From Octopus sinensis (lineage: Eukaryota): a DNA stretch of 64,000 nucleotides. Positions within the stretch are counted from its first letter, which is position 1. Every line of letters begins with the position of its first letter. The stretch is from the NCBI RefSeq assembly GCF_006345805.1, contig NC_043011.1:52092464-52156463 (forward strand). The letters run 5' to 3'. Positions 4,683 through 55,925 of the stretch are shown piece by piece. A program made the position numbers and the translations under genes. The notes beneath the pieces were generated by a model, which was given only the letters and a program-made list of their open reading frames with translations, had not been told where the DNA came from and made no database searches.

Positions 4683-5360
4683 TATATTTATTTATTGGAT
4701 TTCTTTATTCTTGTTACCAAATATTTCCCCATTGGATATTTTGATTTATACTATTGTGACTTGACTATTTTTGTATAAAAATATCTAAGGTTTTTATAGC
4801 TATCGACAATGAATTGTTATGAAATAGTTATTGAAACTGATACAACCAAATTGAGGTGTGTAGAATTACAAAAATATTTTTTGTTTGCAATTCAAAGTCT
4901 AAAAATTGTGAAAACAATTTGAAATCCATCAAAGTAAAAGTATTTACTTAGAGGTTGGTCAAAAAGTGGAAATATTTTTGTGGATGAAAAGCGAAAGTTT
5001 TAATGTTTTTTTTTTTTTTTAATGCAGATCAACCTCGATGACATAACAGATTTGAATTGGACAAAATGAGTTTTGAAATAACTGACTCTTGCAAGTTTCA
5101 TACCTCAGAGGAAAGAACAAGGGTATGAAACCTGGGGAAAAAAACAGTATGAAAACAATTGAAATTTTTGGACATTTTTGGGTTGTTAAGTCTCATGGAG
5201 ATGATGACAAGTGACCAAGATTTTCTGTGCTTGAGAAGATACATCAACCTAAGTGAAATTGTAGTCGTGGCCAGTGCCAGTGACACATAAAAGACACCCA
5301 GTACACTCTGTAGAGTGGTTGTTTTTCGTTGTTTCTGGGTTGATAAAATAAAGTACATGT

Positions 5361-5810
5361 CGGTACTATTTAAGAAGAGTGGTAACGGCGCGCGCTAGTC
5401 GTGACTAGTAGATCCTTACTTTGTGTTTTTGTATTTTATTTACTTTGATTAGAAAAATTATTTACTTTGTGTTTTTGTGTTTTATATGATTTGATTTTGA
5501 TTTTTCCAGTTTCAGCTAATGAGCTGTGGCCATGCTGGGGCACCGCCATTTAAACAGAAGGGAATGCTTACAGCACCTAGGTTTCCCAAGCGGTCACCCA
5601 TCTAAGTACTAACTAGGCTCGATGTTGCTTAACTTCGGTGATCGGACGAGAACCGATGCTTTCAACGTGATATGGCCATAAGCCATATTATTTTGTGTTT
5701 TATTTACTTTGCTAGGTAGTCGTTGTAGGATCGACTAGTCACGACTCGCTAGCACGGATGCGCGACTACGCGAGTGCGCGCACCGGGACCAATCTTCTTA
5801 AATAGTACCG
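5361..5810. mobile_element. Non-autonomous TIR element (MITE) that contains the 5S copy
   Basis: Perfect 18-bp TIRs cggtactatttaagaaga (5361-5378) and tcttcttaaatagtaccg (5793-5810), subterminal ~23-bp inverted repeats, and flanking direct repeat tacatgt (5354-5360, 5811-5817). Confidence 0.8.
5563..5683 (-). rRNA. 5S rRNA: Full-length 5S rRNA gene copy, solitary and probably a retroposed pseudogene or SINE3-like head
   Basis: Reverse complement reads GCTTATGGCCATATCACGTTGAAAGCATCGGTTCTCGTCCGATCACCGAAGTTAAGCAACATCGAGCCTAGTTAGTACTTAGATGGGTGACCGCTTGGGAAACCTAGGTGCTGTAAGCATT (~120 nt), a clear metazoan 5S. It has CpG-type transitions, no T-run terminator and no tandem array. Confidence 0.92.
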
Positions 5811-6242
5811 TACATGTCAACTACTAGAACCAATTTAATCGACTAAACTCTTATTTCCAAATTTCTGGTCGTGTGCCTCCGTAAGAAATTACGGCGAAAG
5901 TAAAGAATACGTACACCCGGTGTTTAGAGTTAGGGGTTTTTTACGCCGAAAACGGGTGGTGTACGTATTCTTTACCGCCGCCGAAATTACCATATTAATG
6001 CTCAAGAAACTAGAAGATATTGAATTCTTTCAACGAAAGATAGAGGGCTAATAACTGTAAAGGATTCGGCATACCTAAGCAAGTGTGTTCGATTCGGCAG
6101 GGCACACTTGTTTGGGCATGACACTTATTCGACCTTCGGAAATAGTTAATGACAACTTCAAACTCAAGGCGAAAACTGAATAACATCTTCATTAATATTC
6201 AACAACATCAAAACTACAACCAAACTCGAGTAAGCAACTTAC

Positions 6243-9671: not shown

Positions 9672-10075
9672 ACTCTTACTCTTTTACTTGCTTCAGTCAT
9701 TTGACTGCGGCCATGCTGGAGCACCGCCTTTAGTCGAGCAAATCGTCCCCGGGACTTATTCTTTGTAAGCCCAGTACTTATTCTATTGGTCTCTTTTGCC
9801 GAACTGCTAAGTGACGGGGACGTAAACACACCAGCATCGGTTGTCAAGCAATGCTAGGGGGACAAACACAGACACACAAACATATACACACACACTTATA
9901 TATATATACATATATACGACAGGCTTCTTTCAGTTTCCGTCTACCAAATCCACTCACAAGGCATCGGTCGGTCTGGGGCTATAGCAGAAGACACTTGCCC
10001 AAGATGCCACGCAGTGGGACTGAACCCGGAACCATGTGGTTGGTTAGCAAGCTACTTACCACAGTCACTCCTGCG
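9672..10075 (-). mobile_element. SINE family A, full length
   Basis: High similarity to 1017-1386. Confidence 0.9.
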
Positions 10076-13543: not shown

Positions 13544-13922
13544 AATTCTGTACTGCACCAACTGATTGCAGCAACCATTTGCATGTGCAGGGAGAGGTAG
13601 CAGGGACCTTCATGAGGCAGTGTGCCGAGGGACATCACTGTGTTTACTTTGCAAGTAGTGAAATTTGTGTCTCTGAGATCACATGTATGATGTAGTCTGC
13701 AATTTTGTTATGGACAGAAACAAAGAGCCAACGTGAAATTTTGCCTTAAACTTGGGAAGTCTGCTACAGAGAGACATTGAGCATGCTTCAGCAAGCTTAT
13801 GGCAATGAGGTAATGGGTTGTACACAATGTTTCAAGTGGTGCAGGCACTTCAAAAGTGGAAGAACATCTCTGGAAAATGATGAGCGATCTAGAAGATCTG
13901 CCACAAGTGTTACCCTTGGAAA

Positions 13923-14592
13923 TGTGGTATTGTGCATTAAGAATTTGTCTCCCAGGTCCAAACCATCAATAGTGGTATTGTGCATTAAGAATTTGTCTCC
14001 CAGGGCCAAACCATCAATAGTGGTATTGTGCATTAAGAATTTGTCTCCCAGGGCCAAACCATCAATAGTGGTATTGTGCATTAAGAATTTGTCTCCCAGG
14101 GCCAAACCATCAATAGTGGTATTGTGCATTAAGAATTGTCTCCCAGGGCCAAACCATCATAGTGGTATTGTGCATTAAGAATTTGTCTCCCAGGGCCAAA
14201 CCATCAATAGTGGTATTGTGCATTAAGAATTTGTCTCCCAGGGCCAAACCATCAATAGTGGTATTGTGCATTAAGAATTTGTCTCCCAGGGCCAAACCAT
14301 CAATAGTGGTATTGTGCATTAAGAATTTGTCTCCCAGGGCCAAACCATCAATAGTGGTATTGTGCATTAAGAATTTGTCTCCCAGGGCCAAACCATCAAT
14401 AGTGGTATTGTGCATTAAGAATTTGTCTCCCAGGGCCAAACCATCAATAGTGGTATTGTGCATTAAGAATTTGTCTCCCAGGGCCAAACCATCAATAGTG
14501 GTATTGTGCATTAAGAATTTGTCTCCCAGGGCCAAACCATCAATAGTGGTATTGTGCATTAAGAATTTGTCTCCCAGGGCCAAACCATCAAT
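13923..14592 (+). repeat. 48-bp tandem minisatellite, 14 copies, derived from transposase coding sequence
   Basis: Unit agtggtattgtgcattaagaatttgtctcccagggccaaaccatcaat. Only unit 1 (substitution) and unit 5 (two 1-bp deletions, 46 bp) differ. There are no spacers. Confidence 0.97.
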
Positions 14593-15035
14593 TGAGAGTT
14601 CTACTGTGACGTTTTGAAGTGTTTGAAGGGAGACATTCGGTGAAAGTGACCAGATCTGTGGAGCACAAAGAATTGGATCTTTCATGATGACAATGCACCC
14701 TGTCACTGAATTCTCCTTGCTCATGCCATCATTCTGCACCCGTCGTATTCGTCAGCCCCTGTGGACTTCCATCTCTTCCCCAAGACGAAAATGCAGCTCA
14801 AAGATTGCTGTTTTAACACTGTTGTTGTAATCTAGAGTGAATTGCAGAAGGTCTTTGACTGACTTGCTGATGGAAAACGACTTCCAAGCTGGATTCCAAA
14901 AGTGGCAGGAATGCTGGGACCACAGCGTTGCTGTGCAAGGTAACTATTTTGAAGGAGGTGATATTAAAACTTCGGTAAATAAGTTATCTTTTATTAAGCA
15001 TAACTATTCCTGGAACTTTTTGATAGCACCCTGTA

Positions 15036-17171: not shown

Positions 17172-17330
17172 ATGTCGGCATTCTTTCGTCTTTTAACGGG
17201 TAGGAGACGTACCCGACCCGGTGGAGGTAATACCACGACCGATGGAGGACAGGTGGCTGGTCGCAAGAAAAATCAGCTCTCGTGTAACGTCGTTCTTCTG
17301 GATGGCACTGTTTATACTGTTGACATAAGT
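17172..17330 (+). CDS. EPB41L5: First coding exon of a FERM-domain (band 4.1 superfamily) protein, Yurt/EPB41L5(-L4B)-like; 53 aa, phase-0 intron follows
   Basis: Translates as MSAFFRLLTGRRRTRPGGGNTTTDGGQVAGRKKNQLSCNVVLLDGTVYTVDIS, followed by a canonical AGT|GTAAGT donor at 17331. The N-terminus (FFR..GRR) and the FERM-N start C.V.LLDGT...VD.S resemble EPB41L5 MLSFFRRTLGRR...ITCRVSLLDGTDVSVDLP, recalled from memory. Choice among band 4.1 paralogues is tentative. Confidence 0.85.
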
Positions 17331-19697
17331 GTAAGTTTTCTTTATATGTACGAATATATATATATATATATAAATGTGTTTGTGTATAACTTTCCTTTGT
17401 AGTTTGTCAAGCACATCGAGTCTGCAGATTCGGTTTCGATTCCTGATTGTCGTAATTTCATTTTTACCTCTACTGCCAAAAAAAAAAAAAAAAAAAAGCA
17501 AGAAAAAGCCCCTTATCCCTCCCTTTCTCCATTTCTCTGCCTATATATAAACTGGAGATTAGTATTCGCTGCTCCGTCGGGGTAACGGCAACGTTCTGAA
17601 GCTCCTCTAAAATGCTTTTTTCCCCCCTCTAAATTTTATCAGTTTAATCATAAGCTACAGCTTAAAAAACGTGTCTCTGCCCTTTTTTAAATCCATTTAA
17701 AAAAAAACGTGTAAACAAAGTCAGGAAGGGACACCAAGCTGTAGTTGTATCAAAGATACACGGCTTTTTGTGAGAAAAATATTTCGTACACAAATCAATG
17801 AACCACTTAACCTTTTTTACCCTGCATCGATAAATACCTGTAATATACCAGTATCAATCTCACCGAGATGAGTTTTCCCCTTACATTGACCAATAAATCT
17901 TCACAATTGTTTTTGTTATTATTGTACTTTAGTAAGAAATCGTTTGTTGCATTACTTTTATAACTATCTATTGATCTTGGTTACTAAGGATTATGTCACA
18001 TCGATGAAGCCATGTTACTAGGGACTCGAGTCGGGCAAGTCAAGTTGTCTCATTGCTGAATCATACCGATCGATTCAAGAGATCGATATAACAGAAAAGT
18101 GGGCTTACGTTACGTTACATGGGTTAATGTCATCTCTGTCACAATATCCAATGCTTTTGTCACTTGTGGCTCTGTTGCATTAACTGCAGCAGTCATATTA
18201 AGCTGTGTCAACTGCTAACAGTCACTTACATCCAACATATAAATACACATTCATACATGAAAAGCGTACACACCTATGACACACACATGTCCTATATGAA
18301 AGGATTTAACATTGATTTGTAGTTAAAAACTTGAGAAGACATATAGGTCATTCATTCTCTCTTTCTAAAGTTGTTAAATATATGTGTGTGTGGTATAAAA
18401 TATATATTGTTTGCTTGTACGTAAAGTTAAGTATAAAAACAGCTGAACATTAAATTGAAGGCTCACCCAATACATTCTAGTAGATTACCATATTTATTAA
18501 TTTTTACAAAGAAAAGGTTGACAGTGACTTAGTGGTTACAGCTTACTAGCCTTCACTAGACAGTTTGGTCAACCTTTTCTCTGTGTGTGTGTGTGTGTTA
18601 TGAAACAAATACGTAGACACGTAGTCGCATCATAAAATCAAACACGAATAGACTCACACACCTGAGTCATCCACTTCATTTAGGTGTGTTCTATGTTAAT
18701 ATGTACACTTGTATATTATACTTGATAAAATAAGACTGAATTAATACGCCCCATTTCATGTGTACAACTTCATATACATGGGCCCTGCTCAATACTTTTA
18801 CTTAGGATCTCACTGCAAATCAGTTTGTCCCACCTTTAAATTGCTGCCCATAAAAACCATGATTTAGTCTGACCAAAATCCTAGTGTTTACTTTCATATT
18901 ATGTGCGTTGAAGATATTGTTTAGCTCTAGGTCAGTCCTGATCGAGCAGACCTCTGTCAAAAGACATTCCAACTGCGACCACCCCATCTTTCTCTGACCT
19001 CATTATCCAGTGTAGTCTTTAAAATAATAGAGTTGGATTTGAGTTAGAGTTAGTTGCTATTTCTAAAAGCTTCAGCGTCCACTTACAGGTTCCCGCGATT
19101 GGTTTGTATGTATTTGAGATGTAATTTAATCCTAGATCTGCTGATCTGTTTATGTGAACATATATTTACTTTGTTTTCTGTATCTGTGCAGTAACGTCTT
19201 AAGGCCTGGACACACTGGGCCGTTGCCCGAGGGTCTCACAGATCGAGGGGACCAACTCTGAACCCTGTTTGCTGGACAAGCTATCAATAAATACTATAGG
19301 GCCAAGTGCATTAATTTGCGTGGGGGCTTAAGACAGCCTTGCGTGTGTTTTGTGACAACTAATATAATAGTCAACAAGTTTCAACAGTTCACTTCATATA
19401 CGTAGTATGTCTGGTGTATTAGATAACAGTTGCCCAGTAACAACTGTGTGTGTGAGTGAGGTAGGCTTTCGGTTTTGTGGTTACGAAATGAAAGTGGGGA
19501 AATTTTCGTAAGCAGTCAGTATTAAAATTGAAATTAAAAAAAAAAAATCCTGTCCTTCTCGGAAATCATAACCACTGCATTTCTAAACGTGATATTATTT
19601 ACCCCCACCCCACGATCTACAGAAAATATTCGAAAAAATTTAAAGCAATTTGGAGTTGGGTTGGGTTGGAAAATTTGAAAAGCTGTATTTGCGCGCA

Positions 19698-20222: not shown

Positions 20223-22524
20223 GTCAATGTATCATATTACATCGACAGAAAGTTACAAAAGTGGCTCAAAGACCGCGAGTTTCTTTGTACATGTGCGTGT
20301 GTGCTCGTACACACACACACACACATCTTTCTTTAAAAATTGCCATGGATTTCATAACTGGACCAGCCAAGTGGTAACCGAACGAAAGCTGTATATAAAA
20401 GAAATCCACTTTTAAATCAATCCTTAATATACACGCTGAAGGCAGTGCATTATTGATAGTGTTAAAACAATATATATACACACCATCAAAATAGCGTAGA
20501 AAATGAGAGAAATGAAAATTTTCATGTTTGAAGAAGAAACATAAGGGGTGGGCCCCGTTAACCTAGTAAGTAGTAAATAAATGTTGACACAGATATGAAT
20601 GAAGGCGGTGCTTCAGCATGGCTTCTTCAACCGTGTTGAGTTAAAGAATACAGATATGTATGCATGTATTGCGATACAAACTTACATACAGACTTATGTA
20701 CACTGTTTGGTCATGAACTATTAATAGTTGATAAGTACCGTTGATATCCGATGAGGCCTTGCCTGGCCGTCGTAATAGCAACCAAATTTTCTCAAACCAC
20801 ACAGTACCACCTTAAAATAAGATCACATAAAACAACGTTCTCTTAGTTAGACTGAGAAAAGGAGATAGTCAAGATCGGAATGGTGTTGATCCGAGGTCCA
20901 TAGTTTTGTTCGATCACAGTTGATCCAGTGTGTTAAACGCAAAGACGAGCCAACGAAATTACTTTTGCGCAGTCGTTTAACTGACCAGAAATGACAGCTA
21001 AATCTTACTCAAATCAACACCTCGCTGATTTATAAAGGGATTTATAGGTTAATATTGTCAGGGATACATTGTTCTTGAGGTTATATGAGGTCACCCCAGT
21101 TTGTATATGAAGGAAGGCGTGTGTGTGTGTGTCAGTCGTTGCAAGAGGGAGGGGAAGACTATCATCAGAGGATTCAGCCCCACCTCCGTCTTCATCTCAT
21201 GAGCCTTATTTCTCCTGTTAAATAATCGTTGCACTCTAAAAACCCACCACCACCTAATGCATACATGTTGTCCCATACGCAAAGCAGACGTCAAAAACCT
21301 GACTTGAAGGACACACGTGTGTGTGTGTATCTATTTATCTATATCTCGTCAATGTTTCGTATATACGACAATGAAGCACACTCTAAAACAGTGCGGTAAT
21401 GTATTAAAAGTAATTAAGTTTATATCCGGTCATAGAGTGACCAGTTATTTCGTATCCACAAAGGCCTTAAAATTTGCAGTCGTCTGCAAGGCTAAGTCCT
21501 TTGTGGATGCGGAATCATTGGTCACTCTATGGCCGGACATAAACTTAATTACTTTTAAGCGAGTTTTAAGAAATTCGACACGTGTCTTTATTATTATTTT
21601 TCATCACCCTGTTCGACCCAGGGCTTGTAAGTAAAACTGTCCACCTGTAAACTACGTCGAATGGATTTTAATTCTAAGTACCGACCTTTTCATACAATGA
21701 GTGTCGAAGTTTCTGTCATAGGAAAACATTTAAACCCGCCATATCAGGCCTGTAACGATACAGGCCCAGGCATTCTACTTGTATTATACTGAAACCAGCC
21801 AGATCTGGTCTCTCACACGTACCCTTCTATGTCACTCTACAAATGACGTCACACCATTGAAATCTCGAAGCTAATAGATAAATGCATGATTAATTCAAAA
21901 CAATGGGAATGAATTAACAAATTTTGACAGTAATCTAAATGCTGAAGAGTTAAAGGTACACGACGCGTGAAACACTCGTTTACTCGACAATTCATTGATT
22001 AGGTATTTCAGTAGATCGATCAACTACTCGTCGAAACCAACGGAAATCCATTTACTTATTTATTTATTCATTTATTTTCGCATATATGTCATTGCTAGTC
22101 TAGACATTCCTGATAAATATTTGTTCTTAAATAGGTGGTAGGTAGGTAGTTGTGGTATTAAGGTTGAGGTGAGCTGCAGTGATTGTTCCCTGGGCACCCC
22201 TCCGCACATGACTTCTTGTTATCTTGCCTGTTTATATATATTAGGCTACTTACCTACTTCTCCAGATTTACTTTTCTGTAGCTCACTTGCTAGCTAGCTA
22301 CATTTACCTTGTTACCTTGTCATCTTCGTTGCTATCCGTCCATCTATCTGTCTGTTTATTTGTTAGCTAACTAGCTAAATTGTTTGCAAGTTAGTTGGTT
22401 GCTTTTGCTACCTGTCAACTCTCTGGAGTTGCTTTCCTAGACCAATGATTTTCAAACTTTTCGATTTAGGACACACCATCTGCTTTAAAAATCTTTTTAG
22501 TGCGCGCGCGCACATATGTGTGTA

Positions 22525-53819: not shown

Positions 53820-54190
53820 GTATTTTATCGTGTTTCAGTCATTAGACTGTGGCCATGCTGGGGCACCACCTTGAAGGATTTCTAGTTGAACGAACTGATC
53901 CAATTACTTATTTATTTTTAAATCTGGTACTTATTCTATTGGTCCCTTTTGCCGGACCACTAAGTTACGGGGACATAAACATGCCAACACCAGTTGTCAA
54001 ATGGTGGTGGGAAACACACATACACATGTGCACAGTGGGCTTCTTTCAGTTTCTGTCTACCAAATCCACTCAAAGATTTGGTTGGCCCAAGGCTACAGTA
54101 GATGACACCTGCCCAAGGTGCCTTGCAGTCAGACTGAACCTAGAACCATGAGGTTGGAAAGCAAACTTCTTACTGCACAGCCACACCTGT
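53820..54190 (-). mobile_element. SINE family A
   Basis: Family A motifs. Confidence 0.82.
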
Positions 54191-54191
54191 G

Positions 54192-54239
54192 CAAGTGGTC
54201 ACCTATCTAATTACTAACTAGGCTTGATGTTGCTTAACT
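54192..54239 (-). pseudogene. 5S rRNA internal fragment
   Basis: caagtggtcacctatctaattactaactaggcttgatgttgcttaact aligns with the internal control region part of the 5563-5683 copy. Confidence 0.75.
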
Positions 54240-55532: not shown

Positions 55533-55925
55533 ATAGGCGCAGGAGTGGCTGTGTAGTAAGTAGCTGTGTGGTTCAGTCCCACTGCGTGGCATCTTGGGCA
55601 AGTGTCTTCTGCTATAGCCCCGGGCCAACCAATGCCTTGTGAGTGGATTTGGTAGATGGAAACTGAAAGAAGCCCGTCGTATATATGTATATATATGTGT
55701 ATGTGTGTGTGTTTGTGTGTGTGTGTTTGTCCCTCTAGCATTGCTTGACAACCGATGCTGGTGTGTTTACGTCCCCGTCACTTAGCAGTTCGGCAAAAGA
55801 GACCGATAGAATAAGTATTGGGCTTACAAAAAATAAGTCCTGGGGTCGATTTGCTCGACTAAAGGCGGTGCTCCAGCATGGCCGCAGTCAAATGACTGAA
55901 ACAAGTGAAAGAGTAAAAGAGAGAG
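55533..55925 (+). mobile_element. SINE family A, full length, young-looking
   Basis: Family A motifs with CpGs retained. Confidence 0.9.

What the first reader, a model, noticed from the sequence alone, without database searches (positions are those of the whole stretch)
5361..5810. 5S rRNA + SINE-tail chimera sitting inside a TIR element (SINE3-like retroposon or 5S-carrying MITE)
On the minus strand a complete 5S rRNA (5683-5563) runs, without a Pol III T-run terminator, into aaatggcggtgccccagcatggccacagctcattagctgaaactggaaaaa. That is the same 3' tail used by the tRNA-headed SINE A copies in this window, followed by an A-rich tail. A 13-bp direct repeat ttttgtgttttat (5473-5485, 5691-5703) brackets it like a retroposition TSD. 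The whole unit lies between perfect 18-bp TIRs with a 7-bp duplication (tacatgt). Two readings fit: a 5S-headed SINE (SINE3) or template-switch chimera using the SINE A partner LINE inserted into a MITE, or a MITE subfamily that now spreads 5S copies. 5S-derived SINEs are known in other animals; I do not know of this arrangement in octopus, but have not searched.
Basis: partly seen in the sequence, partly recalled or inferred. Interest (0 to 1): 0.78.

Follow-up and report, generated by a model that had tools for sequence, protein, structure and literature searches.

The report
5S-headed retroposon nested in a MITE
A complete 5S ribosomal RNA copy fused to a LINE/SINE-type 3' tail was reverse-transcribed as one unit into a small DNA transposon (MITE); this is a known kind of mobile element (a 5S-headed SINE or its one-off precursor) not yet described for octopus, so it is tidy but fairly ordinary.

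Summary
A full-length 5S rRNA (5683-5565, minus strand; Rfam 108.9 bits) has no terminator. It runs into a 41-nt two-hairpin tail and an (AAAATC)n end, and exact 13-bp repeats bracket the whole unit. Removing the 205-bp unit plus one repeat rebuilds an internal repeat of the surrounding 232-bp TIR element at 31 of 32 bases. So the unit was retroposed into an existing MITE, which is only the landing site.

The tail is related to the window's tRNA-like SINE tails but is not the same: 75% identity against 89% among those SINEs, two compensated stem pairs, and a different terminal repeat. Seven extra 5' bases look like a cDNA snap-back on 5S nt 8-16.

A second 5S piece (nt 50-97) at 54239-54192 is fused to the start of a full-length SINE copy. 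5S fusions with this tail system therefore recur.

I could not test whether this is a multi-copy SINE3-type family or a one-off template-switch chimera, because no cephalopod genome was searchable. I favour a family (about 0.55). The giant squid genome is reported to hold about 24,000 5S-derived loci. The reading that the MITE spreads 5S copies has no support but is not excluded.

The parts
5361..5810 (.). Host TIR element (MITE), 232 bp before the insertion. It has GC-rich arms (51-56% GC) and an AT-rich centre (17% GC), with no coding capacity.
   Evidence: It is single-copy in the window.
5361..5395 (+). Left terminal inverted repeat (18 nt perfect, 35 nt at 89%).
5776..5810 (-). Right terminal inverted repeat.
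5353..5361 (.). Left copy of the MITE target-site duplication: GTACATGTC (9 bp), or TACATGT at 5354-5360 (7 bp) if the TIR starts at C5361.
5810..5818 (.). Right copy of the MITE target-site duplication: GTACATGTC, or TACATGT at 5811-5817.
5416..5461 (+). MITE internal repeat unit 1 (46 nt). Unit 2 is 5462-5485 plus 5704-5711 and is split by the retroposon.
   Evidence: the reconstructed unit 2 matches unit 1 at 31/32.
5473..5485 (.). Retroposon target-site duplication, 3' side of the element (TTTTGTGTTTTAT).
5691..5703 (.). Retroposon target-site duplication, 5' side of the element.
5486..5690 (-). The retroposed unit (205 bp): extra 7 nt, 5S, TT, linker, two-hairpin tail, simple-repeat end.
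5684..5690 (-). Seven extra 5' nucleotides, TAATATG. Together with 5S nt 1-2 they are the reverse complement of 5S nt 8-16 (8/9), a putative cDNA snap-back footprint.
   Evidence: chance about 0.004; pair I8.
5565..5683 (-). Complete 5S rRNA head. The positions equivalent to box A, IE and box C lie at 5634-5620, 5617-5612 and 5604-5587.
5550..5564 (-). TT (possibly Pol III terminal U residues) plus the linker CCCTTCTGTTTAA, weakly similar to the ...CCCTTTAAGG stretch of the long SINE A subfamily.
   Evidence: the similarity is an inference.
5509..5549 (-). LINE/SINE-type 3' recognition block with two hairpins (5548-5527 and 5526-5513).
5486..5508 (-). Terminal simple-repeat tail, TGGAAAAATCAAAATCAAATCAT.
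5453..5457 (-). First Pol III-type terminator (TTTTT) downstream of the 5S, inside the MITE. The predicted transcript is 231 nt.
54192..54239 (-). Second 5S-derived piece (5S nt 50-97, 44/48 identical to the first). It is fused directly to nt ~1-2 of a full-length SINE A copy.
53824..54191 (-). The SINE A copy (long subfamily) fused to the second 5S piece. Its tail is the closest in the window to the 5S-linked tail.

Best explanation
A roughly 200-nt Pol III-type RNA was reverse-transcribed by a LINE enzyme at a nick in the AT-rich centre of an existing 232-bp MITE. This is target-primed reverse transcription. The RNA consisted of a complete 5S rRNA starting at +1, followed by about 77 nt of LINE/SINE-type 3' sequence: two hairpins plus an (AAAATC)n end.

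The insertion produced a 13-bp target-site duplication and, at the 5' end, a 7-nt snap-back copy. The MITE is only the landing site.

The unit is most likely a copy of a 5S-headed SINE (SINE3 type). Such elements arise when a LINE reverse transcriptase switches template from a LINE/SINE tail onto 5S rRNA. They then propagate because the 5S internal promoter travels with the transcript and the tail is recognised by the LINE enzyme.

Shown: the anatomy, the insertion into the MITE, the conserved tail fold, and the absence of a terminator. Inferred: membership of a multi-copy family, Pol III transcription, and the identity of the LINE partner.
For: - The 5S head is full-length, structurally intact apart from one pair, and isolated.
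- There is no T-run until 107 nt downstream.
- The 13-bp exact repeat brackets the composite, and excision rebuilds the MITE repeat unit at 31/32.
- The tail shares a 41-nt block and the same two-hairpin fold with nine SINE tails.
- The tail is nevertheless a separate lineage. It is 75% identical to those tails against 89% among them. Two stem pairs are kept by double-sided changes (20/500 shuffles, and the slid controls collapse). It also has its own terminal repeat. This argues against a piece simply copied from a SINE A RNA.
- Only the minimal recognition module (about 77 nt) is attached, as in streamlined SINEs.
- The extra 5' bases are an 8/9 inverted copy of 5S nt 8-16 (P about 0.004), which places the template's 5' end at 5S +1.
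- A second 5S piece in the same 64 kb shares the helix-breaking A61 and is fused to the SINE copy with the most similar tail.
- The giant squid genome has about 24,000 5S-derived loci 'likely to be SINEs' (PMC6962438).
- SINE3 families have arisen many times independently (PMC10886601).
- Soft argument: a random 64-kb window is far more likely to contain a member of a high-copy family than a unique chimera.
Against: - No second copy of this 5S-tail junction was seen anywhere. There is only one in the window, and no searchable collection holds octopus DNA.
- The two 5S fusions in the window have different architectures. That fits repeated one-off template switching as well as it fits a family.
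- The head is almost native-looking, so it carries no clear family-diagnostic substitutions. A61 is a CpG transition that could recur.
- The native 5S of this animal was not available for comparison.
- No partner LINE with this tail was found in the window.
Confidence: 0.55

Rival explanations
1. It is a one-off chimeric retrocopy and not a family. During retroposition of a LINE or a related SINE RNA, the reverse transcriptase copied about 77 nt of the 3' end. It then jumped onto the 3' end of a mature 5S rRNA and copied it to its 5' end. The product integrated into the MITE and never amplified. This resembles the human U6-L1 and 5S-L1 chimeras of Buzdin et al. 2003, as cited in PMC4758252 and PMC4824008.
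For: - The architecture matches this type exactly: a full-length small RNA at the 5' end, a 5'-truncated retroelement at the 3' end, and one TSD around both.
- TT after the 5S body is what the terminal U residues of a mature Pol III transcript would leave.
- The head is nearly native, with one broken pair.
- A second 5S fusion with a different architecture lies in the same window, suggesting that the enzyme often switches onto 5S RNA.
- The junction is single-copy in all sequence I could search.
Against: - The tail does not match any of the nine SINE tails sampled. The donor would have to be an unsampled LINE or SINE.
- Only the minimal two-hairpin module was retained, which is improbable for an arbitrary switch point on a long LINE RNA.
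- Unique chimeras are rare per genome, so meeting one, let alone two 5S fusions, in a random 64 kb is unlikely unless such events are very frequent.
- Squid carry tens of thousands of 5S-derived loci.
Confidence: 0.3
2. It is a 5S-carrying MITE subfamily. After the retroposon landed, the loaded 450-bp TIR element was itself mobilised by a DNA transposase. Copies of the 5S unit now spread by cut-and-paste. This does not exclude either origin above.
For: The TIRs are perfect over 18 bp and the flanking duplication is perfect, so the MITE may have moved recently. The precedent is by analogy only: 5S promoters are carried inside the LTRs of Cassandra and Ajax, thought to derive from SINE3 insertions (PMC10886601).
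Against: There is no other copy of the MITE, loaded or empty, in the window or in any searchable collection. Nothing requires the MITE to have moved after the insertion. Nested TE insertions are commonplace.
Confidence: 0.07
3. It is a DNA-level 5S gene or pseudogene, such as an orphon from the 5S array, that happens to lie next to an independently inserted, truncated SINE fragment.
For: The 5S is intact enough to be a gene.
Against: - No tandem array is present, and this is the only full 5S in 64 kb.
- No terminator follows it.
- No separate TSDs flank the tail or the 5S alone.
- The single 13-bp duplication brackets both parts, and excision restores the host sequence.
- The snap-back footprint at 5S +1 indicates an RNA intermediate.
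Confidence: 0.03

Closest known systems
SINE3 / 5S rRNA-derived SINEs (zebrafish SINE3, Kapitonov & Jurka 2003; lepidopteran HaSE3 and PxSE4/5; fruit-bat and fungal 5S SINEs), as cited in PMC10886601, PMC3531059 and PMC4824008
   Same: Both have a 5S-derived head that carries the internal Pol III control region and a non-5S 3' part ending in a simple repeat. Both insert with TSDs and lack a terminator after the head.
   Different: Here the head is a complete, almost unaltered 5S (119 nt). It is followed directly by a roughly 77-nt tail with no body or Deu/CORE-type central domain. Copy number and the partner LINE are unknown. No such family is described for octopus in the papers I could search.
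Template-switch chimeric retrogenes (small RNA fused to L1/Alu/mRNA; Buzdin et al. 2003)
   Same: Both have a full-length small RNA at the 5' end, a 5'-truncated retroelement at the 3' end, and one TSD around the whole.
   Different: Those are unique, dead-on-arrival copies made by L1. Here the 3' part is a compact stem-loop module of a stringent-type tail, which would let the chimera be recognised again. It is therefore a plausible SINE founder or member.
AmnSINE1 / DeuSINE-type 5S-tRNA composite heads (Nishihara et al. 2006, cited in PMC4824008 and PMC4758252)
   Same: The second locus (54239-53824) joins a 5S piece to the 5' end of a tRNA-like SINE. This is the arrangement proposed to have created those composite promoters.
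   Different: Only 5S nt 50-97 are present and the tRNA-like SINE is complete. A single copy was seen, and its TSD is ambiguous in low-complexity DNA.
Cassandra / Ajax TRIMs (5S promoter inside LTRs; PMC10886601)
   Same: A 5S-derived Pol III unit sits inside another non-autonomous mobile element, probably through insertion of a 5S SINE.
   Different: The host here is a TIR element and not an LTR element. The 5S is central and single, not duplicated in the terminal repeats. There is no evidence that the host element uses it.
The 5S-derived loci of the giant squid genome (about 24,000; PMC6962438)
   Same: Dispersed 5S-derived copies in a cephalopod, suspected to be SINEs.
   Different: The paper only counts them by Rfam and does not describe their structure or tails, so no sequence comparison was possible.

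Membership tests
SINE, 5S-headed (SINE3), by the SINEBase formal criteria (PMC3531059) | Short (<1 kb), interspersed, not tandem | tested here: met
   The unit is 205 bp. It is the only full 5S in 64 kb.
SINE, 5S-headed (SINE3), by the SINEBase formal criteria (PMC3531059) | At least 60% identity to 5S rRNA over at least 60 nt | tested here: met
   Rfam 5S model positions 1-120, 108.9 bits.
SINE, 5S-headed (SINE3), by the SINEBase formal criteria (PMC3531059) | Extra non-5S sequence (body or LINE-type tail) that sets it apart from a 5S retropseudogene | tested here: met
   A roughly 77-nt tail with two hairpins, homologous to the SINE tails in the window.
SINE, 5S-headed (SINE3), by the SINEBase formal criteria (PMC3531059) | [quoted passage not shown] | not testable with these tools
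   No cephalopod genome was searchable and every indirect route failed. There is one junction copy in the window.
SINE, 5S-headed (SINE3), by the SINEBase formal criteria (PMC3531059) | Transcribed by Pol III from the internal promoter | not testable with these tools
   The positions equivalent to box A, IE and box C are present and intact, and no terminator falls within the unit. SINEBase itself treats promoter motifs as an indication and not as proof.
SINE, 5S-headed (SINE3), by the SINEBase formal criteria (PMC3531059) | 3' end shared with a partner LINE | tested here: inconclusive
   The tail is shared at about 75% with the resident tRNA-like SINE tails. No LINE 3' end with this tail lies in the window.
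SINE, 5S-headed (SINE3), by the SINEBase formal criteria (PMC3531059) | Retroposition hallmarks: TSD and a simple-repeat 3' end | tested here: met
   The 13-bp TSD is exact, the empty site reconstructs at 31/32, and the element ends in (AAAATC)n.
Template-switch chimeric retrogene | Full-length small RNA at the 5' end, a 5'-truncated retroelement at the 3' end, and one TSD around both | tested here: met
Template-switch chimeric retrogene | Unique junction that is not amplified | not testable with these tools
   Same limitation as for copy number.
MITE (the host element) | Terminal inverted repeats | tested here: met
   18 nt perfect and 35 nt at 89%, against 0.03 matches expected by chance.
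MITE (the host element) | Target-site duplication | tested here: met
   7 bp (TACATGT) or 9 bp (GTACATGTC), depending on where the TIR starts. The superfamily therefore cannot be assigned: a 9-bp TSD would suggest Mutator-like, and 7-8 bp would suggest P or hAT-like (from general knowledge).
MITE (the host element) | Small, non-coding and multi-copy | tested here: inconclusive
   It is 232 bp before the insertion and has no ORF. Only one copy is in the window and none is in the searchable collections.
Functional 5S rRNA gene | Tandem array membership and a T-run terminator directly after about +120 | tested here: not met
   A single isolated copy, with only TT after the gene and the first run of four or more T 107 nt downstream.
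Cassandra/Ajax-type element (5S promoter in terminal repeats) | 5S-derived sequence present in both terminal repeats of the host element | tested here: not met
   The 5S is single and central, and the TIRs contain no 5S.

The most novel reading that the evidence does not exclude
The loaded element (TIRs + 5S + tail) is a mobile MITE subfamily. A DNA transposase then spreads a Pol III-transcribed 5S unit. That would be a DNA-transposon counterpart of Cassandra and Ajax, and a route by which one 5S unit uses both cut-and-paste and retroposition. A milder version is that the octopus LINE enzyme switches onto 5S RNA so often that new 5S-headed SINEs are continually being born, with the two different fusions in this window as snapshots.
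Probability: 0.07. Interest if true: 0.65.

Novelty: new member of a known kind. Interest (0 to 1): 0.35.

Why it matters
If this is a family, it would be a 5S-headed SINE in octopus, where the papers I could search describe only tRNA-derived SINEs (OR1, OR2, OK). It would also give a structure to the unexplained excess of 5S-derived loci reported in squid.

This copy is unusually legible. It has an intact head, a minimal two-hairpin tail with compensated stem changes, a clean empty-site reconstruction and a snap-back footprint. That makes it a good specimen of how SINE3-type elements arise by template switching, and of which tail features the partner LINE enzyme reads.

For genome annotation, it warns that Rfam 5S hits in cephalopods are largely retroposons and not genes. 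The nesting inside a MITE is an ordinary nested insertion unless loaded copies turn up elsewhere.

Tried and rejected
Routes to other genomic copies, all empty:
- Two metagenome scans, for the junction pattern and for the tail variant.
- Two viral-contig scans, for the junction and for the MITE TIR.
- One prokaryote-genome scan for the generic SINE tail.
- A protein search with the junction frame read through its stops, after a first attempt was too short.
- A protein search with the natural 41-aa MITE-5S ORF.
- An exhaustive representative search with the 34-aa junction frame.
- An exact look-up of five start-codon ORFs across the insert.

An antisense SINE A ORF found only one Argonauta hians protein. 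Its 20.3-kb locus has no 5S, no MITE and one degenerate tail, and no neighbouring genes to walk along.

Native cephalopod 5S sequence: nothing in the searchable papers, and Walker & Doolittle 1983 and Albertin 2015 are not held. Literature searches for SINE/5S classes in cephalopods and for the octopus SINE/LINE partnership added nothing beyond the squid note.

Ideas rejected:
- The 13-mer as merely a third copy of the MITE's internal repeat. The excision restores unit 2 in exact register, and the ATGATTTGATT that follows the left 13-mer is better read as the (GATTT)n end of the retroposon.
- A TA target-site duplication with longer TIRs. The flanks do not fit.
- SINE A insertion into an older 5S element at the second locus. 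There is no 5S nt 98-119 and no adjacent target footprint downstream.
- The weak tail-like hit at 20602-20622 as a LINE 3' end. It is only a 20-nt remnant.

Full report
**Observation.**
The region was read on both strands. Rfam finds one 5S rRNA above threshold in the 64-kb window. It lies on the minus strand at 5683-5565, covers model positions 1-120 and scores 108.9 bits against a gathering score of 38. It has a single non-canonical pair, C17.A61. Even at E<=1 there is no other full 5S; the remaining hits are microsatellite artefacts. This is therefore an isolated copy and not part of a tandem 5S array.

Only TT follows the 5S. The first run of four or more T on that strand is TTTTT at 5457-5453, 107 nt downstream. 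The sequence after the 5S is TT-CCCTTCTGTTTAA-ATGGCGGTGCCCCAGCATGGCCACAGCTCATTAGCTGAAAC-TGGAAAAATCAAAATCAAATCAT.

**The tail.**
The core GGTGCCCCAGCATGGCCAC occurs ten times in the window, with none expected by chance. ARAGORN and Rfam do not call its head a tRNA.

- The shared block is 41 nt long.
- The 5S-linked tail is 68-80% (mean 75%) identical to the nine SINE tails, which are 89% alike among themselves.
- All tails fold into the same two hairpins.
- In the second hairpin the 5S-linked tail has CAGCU/AGCUG where the SINEs have CAGUC/GACUG. Two pairs are thus kept by changes on both sides (2 such pairs, reached by 20 of 500 shuffles; pairing falls from 89% to 18-43% when partners are slid).
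- The terminal simple repeat is also different: (AAAATC)n-like versus (GTAAAAGA)n.

The tail is therefore homologous and structurally equivalent to the SINE A tail, but it is a separate lineage. It is not a fragment of any SINE A sampled here. That points to a related but possibly different LINE partner. No LINE 3' end with this tail lies in the window.

**Insertion into a MITE.**
The exact 13-mer TTTTGTGTTTTAT flanks the composite at 5473-5485 and 5691-5703 and does not extend on either side. It lies in an AT-rich internal repeat of the surrounding element (family D1). Deleting 5486-5703 joins TTACTTTGTGTTTTTGTGTTTTAT to TTACTTTG.... This recreates a second repeat unit identical to unit 1 (5416-5447) at 31 of 32 positions. 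That is the signature of a target-site duplication made when a 205-bp unit entered an existing 232-bp element. No separate duplication flanks the 5S alone or the tail alone, so the two parts arrived together.

The host element has:
- 18-nt perfect TIRs, extending to 35 nt at 89%;
- a second inverted segment of 23 nt at 91%;
- GC-rich arms and an AT-rich centre;
- no ORF;
- a flanking duplication that reads as 7 bp (TACATGT) or 9 bp (GTACATGTC), depending on whether the TIR starts at C5361 or G5362.

Its superfamily cannot be assigned, and it is single-copy in the window.

**Footprint at the 5' end.**
Seven nucleotides (TAATATG) lie between the 5' duplication and 5S nucleotide 1. With 5S nt 1-2 they form GCCATATTA in reverse complement, which matches 5S nt 8-16 (GCCATATCA) at 8 of 9 positions. 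Random 7-mers of local composition do this in about 0.4% of trials. The simplest reading, which is an inference, is as follows. The first-strand cDNA reached the 5' end of the template at 5S +1. It then folded back on the self-complementary GGCC and copied a few of its own bases. This supports an RNA intermediate whose 5' end was exactly 5S +1: either a Pol III transcript or mature 5S rRNA.

**A second 5S fusion.**
A sensitive search of the window with the 205-bp unit found a 48-nt stretch at 54239-54192 on the minus strand. It equals 5S nt 50-97 at 44/48 (nhmmer E=2e-8). It shares the unusual bases of the first copy, including A61, the only helix-breaking base in the full copy.

It abuts nucleotide ~1-2 of a full-length SINE A copy in the same orientation...GACCACTT|GCACAGGTGTGGCTG..., against the consensus start GGCGCAGGAGTGGCTG. 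That copy is the one whose tail is closest to the 5S-linked tail. No 5S nt 98-119 and no adjacent target footprint lie beyond the SINE's 3' end. A simple insertion of SINE A into an older 5S element is therefore less likely than a fused cDNA. Its own TSD is ambiguous in microsatellite DNA. So 5S sequences recur in fusion with this tail system, in two different architectures, within 64 kb.

**Mechanism and rivals.**
The composite certainly originated by joining 5S RNA to a LINE/SINE 3' end. Template switching of a LINE reverse transcriptase is the established explanation for such joins (Buzdin 2003 and Nishihara 2006, as cited in PMC4758252 and PMC4824008). The open question is whether this copy belongs to an amplifying 5S-headed SINE family or is a dead-on-arrival chimera.

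For a family:
- the tail is a separate, structurally maintained lineage;
- only the minimal recognition module is attached;
- the second 5S piece shares A61;
- squid carry about 24,000 5S-derived loci 'likely to be SINEs' (PMC6962438);
- SINE3 families arise repeatedly (PMC10886601);
- a random window is far more likely to hit a high-copy family than a unique event.

For a one-off:
- the architecture is exactly that of chimeric retrogenes;
- the head is nearly native;
- the two fusions differ from each other;
- no second junction copy was seen.

I put the family at about 0.55 and the one-off at about 0.30. The nested retroposition itself I hold at about 0.85. The idea that the loaded MITE spreads 5S copies has no supporting evidence but cannot be excluded (about 0.07). 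A DNA-level 5S orphon next to an unrelated SINE fragment is disfavoured by the single bracketing TSD, the missing terminator and the snap-back footprint (about 0.03).

**Limits.**
None of the collections holds octopus DNA. Scans of metagenome, viral and prokaryote contigs found nothing. Protein-based tricks with ORFs across the junction also found nothing. The only cephalopod handle was one Argonauta hians protein that matches an antisense SINE A ORF. This indirectly supports an octopod origin for the window. Its 20-kb locus was uninformative. The native 5S of the species was not obtainable. Copy number, partner LINE and transcription therefore remain untested.

**Comparison and novelty.**
By the SINEBase criteria (PMC3531059) the unit meets the tests for length, interspersion, 5S identity, extra sequence and TSD. 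The criterion of at least 100 copies could not be tested. It works like a simple SINE3: a 5S head plus a LINE-type tail, with no central domain. No 5S-headed SINE is described for octopus in the papers searched. Repbase and Dfam could not be consulted.

At most it is a new member of a known kind. The MITE nesting is ordinary.

Noticed in passing
window 54192-54239 (minus), adjoining 53824-54191: A second 5S-derived piece (5S nt 50-97, i.e. the span equivalent to the internal control region) is fused head-to-tail to the first nucleotides of a full-length tRNA-like SINE copy. Rfam does not detect it. Its TSD is ambiguous.
   Followed up: yes
window 5887-5988: A small palindromic element lies 77 nt from the MITE, with 31-nt arms at 87% complementarity and a 40-nt spacer (AATTACGGCGAAAGTAAAGAATACGTACACC...). 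It may be another MITE or foldback element.
   Followed up: no
window 13777-14740: An ORF begins with a weak Mos1/mariner HTH_48 match (E=0.03, below the cutoff). It is followed by a long tandem array of a 33-nt unit that reads open on both strands (VVLCIKNLSPRAKPSI... / LMHNTTIDGLALGDKF...).
   Followed up: partly
window 17172-17402 (+): An ORF whose ...LSCNVVLLDGTVYTVDIS motif reminded me of the N-terminus of FERM-domain proteins, possibly a first exon of a host gene. Pfam gives no hit, so this remains an impression only.
   Followed up: partly
window, SINE A copies (e.g. 9683-10060, 55540-55910): Neither ARAGORN nor Rfam recognises the abundant tRNA-like SINE as tRNA-derived. Most copies carry an internal or 3' TG/TA microsatellite, and these generate dozens of spurious sub-threshold miRNA hits (mir-297, mir-466 and others).
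   Followed up: partly
L001 (Argonauta hians GCA_054771915.1, BAAFZT010000006.1:34040487-34060786): An annotated 99-aa 'hypothetical protein' of Argonauta hians is 68% identical to an antisense ORF of the window's SINE A. That SINE, or a relative of it, is therefore shared across octopods and has been annotated as a gene.
   Followed up: partly
window 20600-20622: An isolated 20-nt remnant of the SINE tail core (AAGGCGGTGCTTCAGCATGGC) with no recognisable SINE body. It is probably an old, decayed relative.
   Followed up: partly
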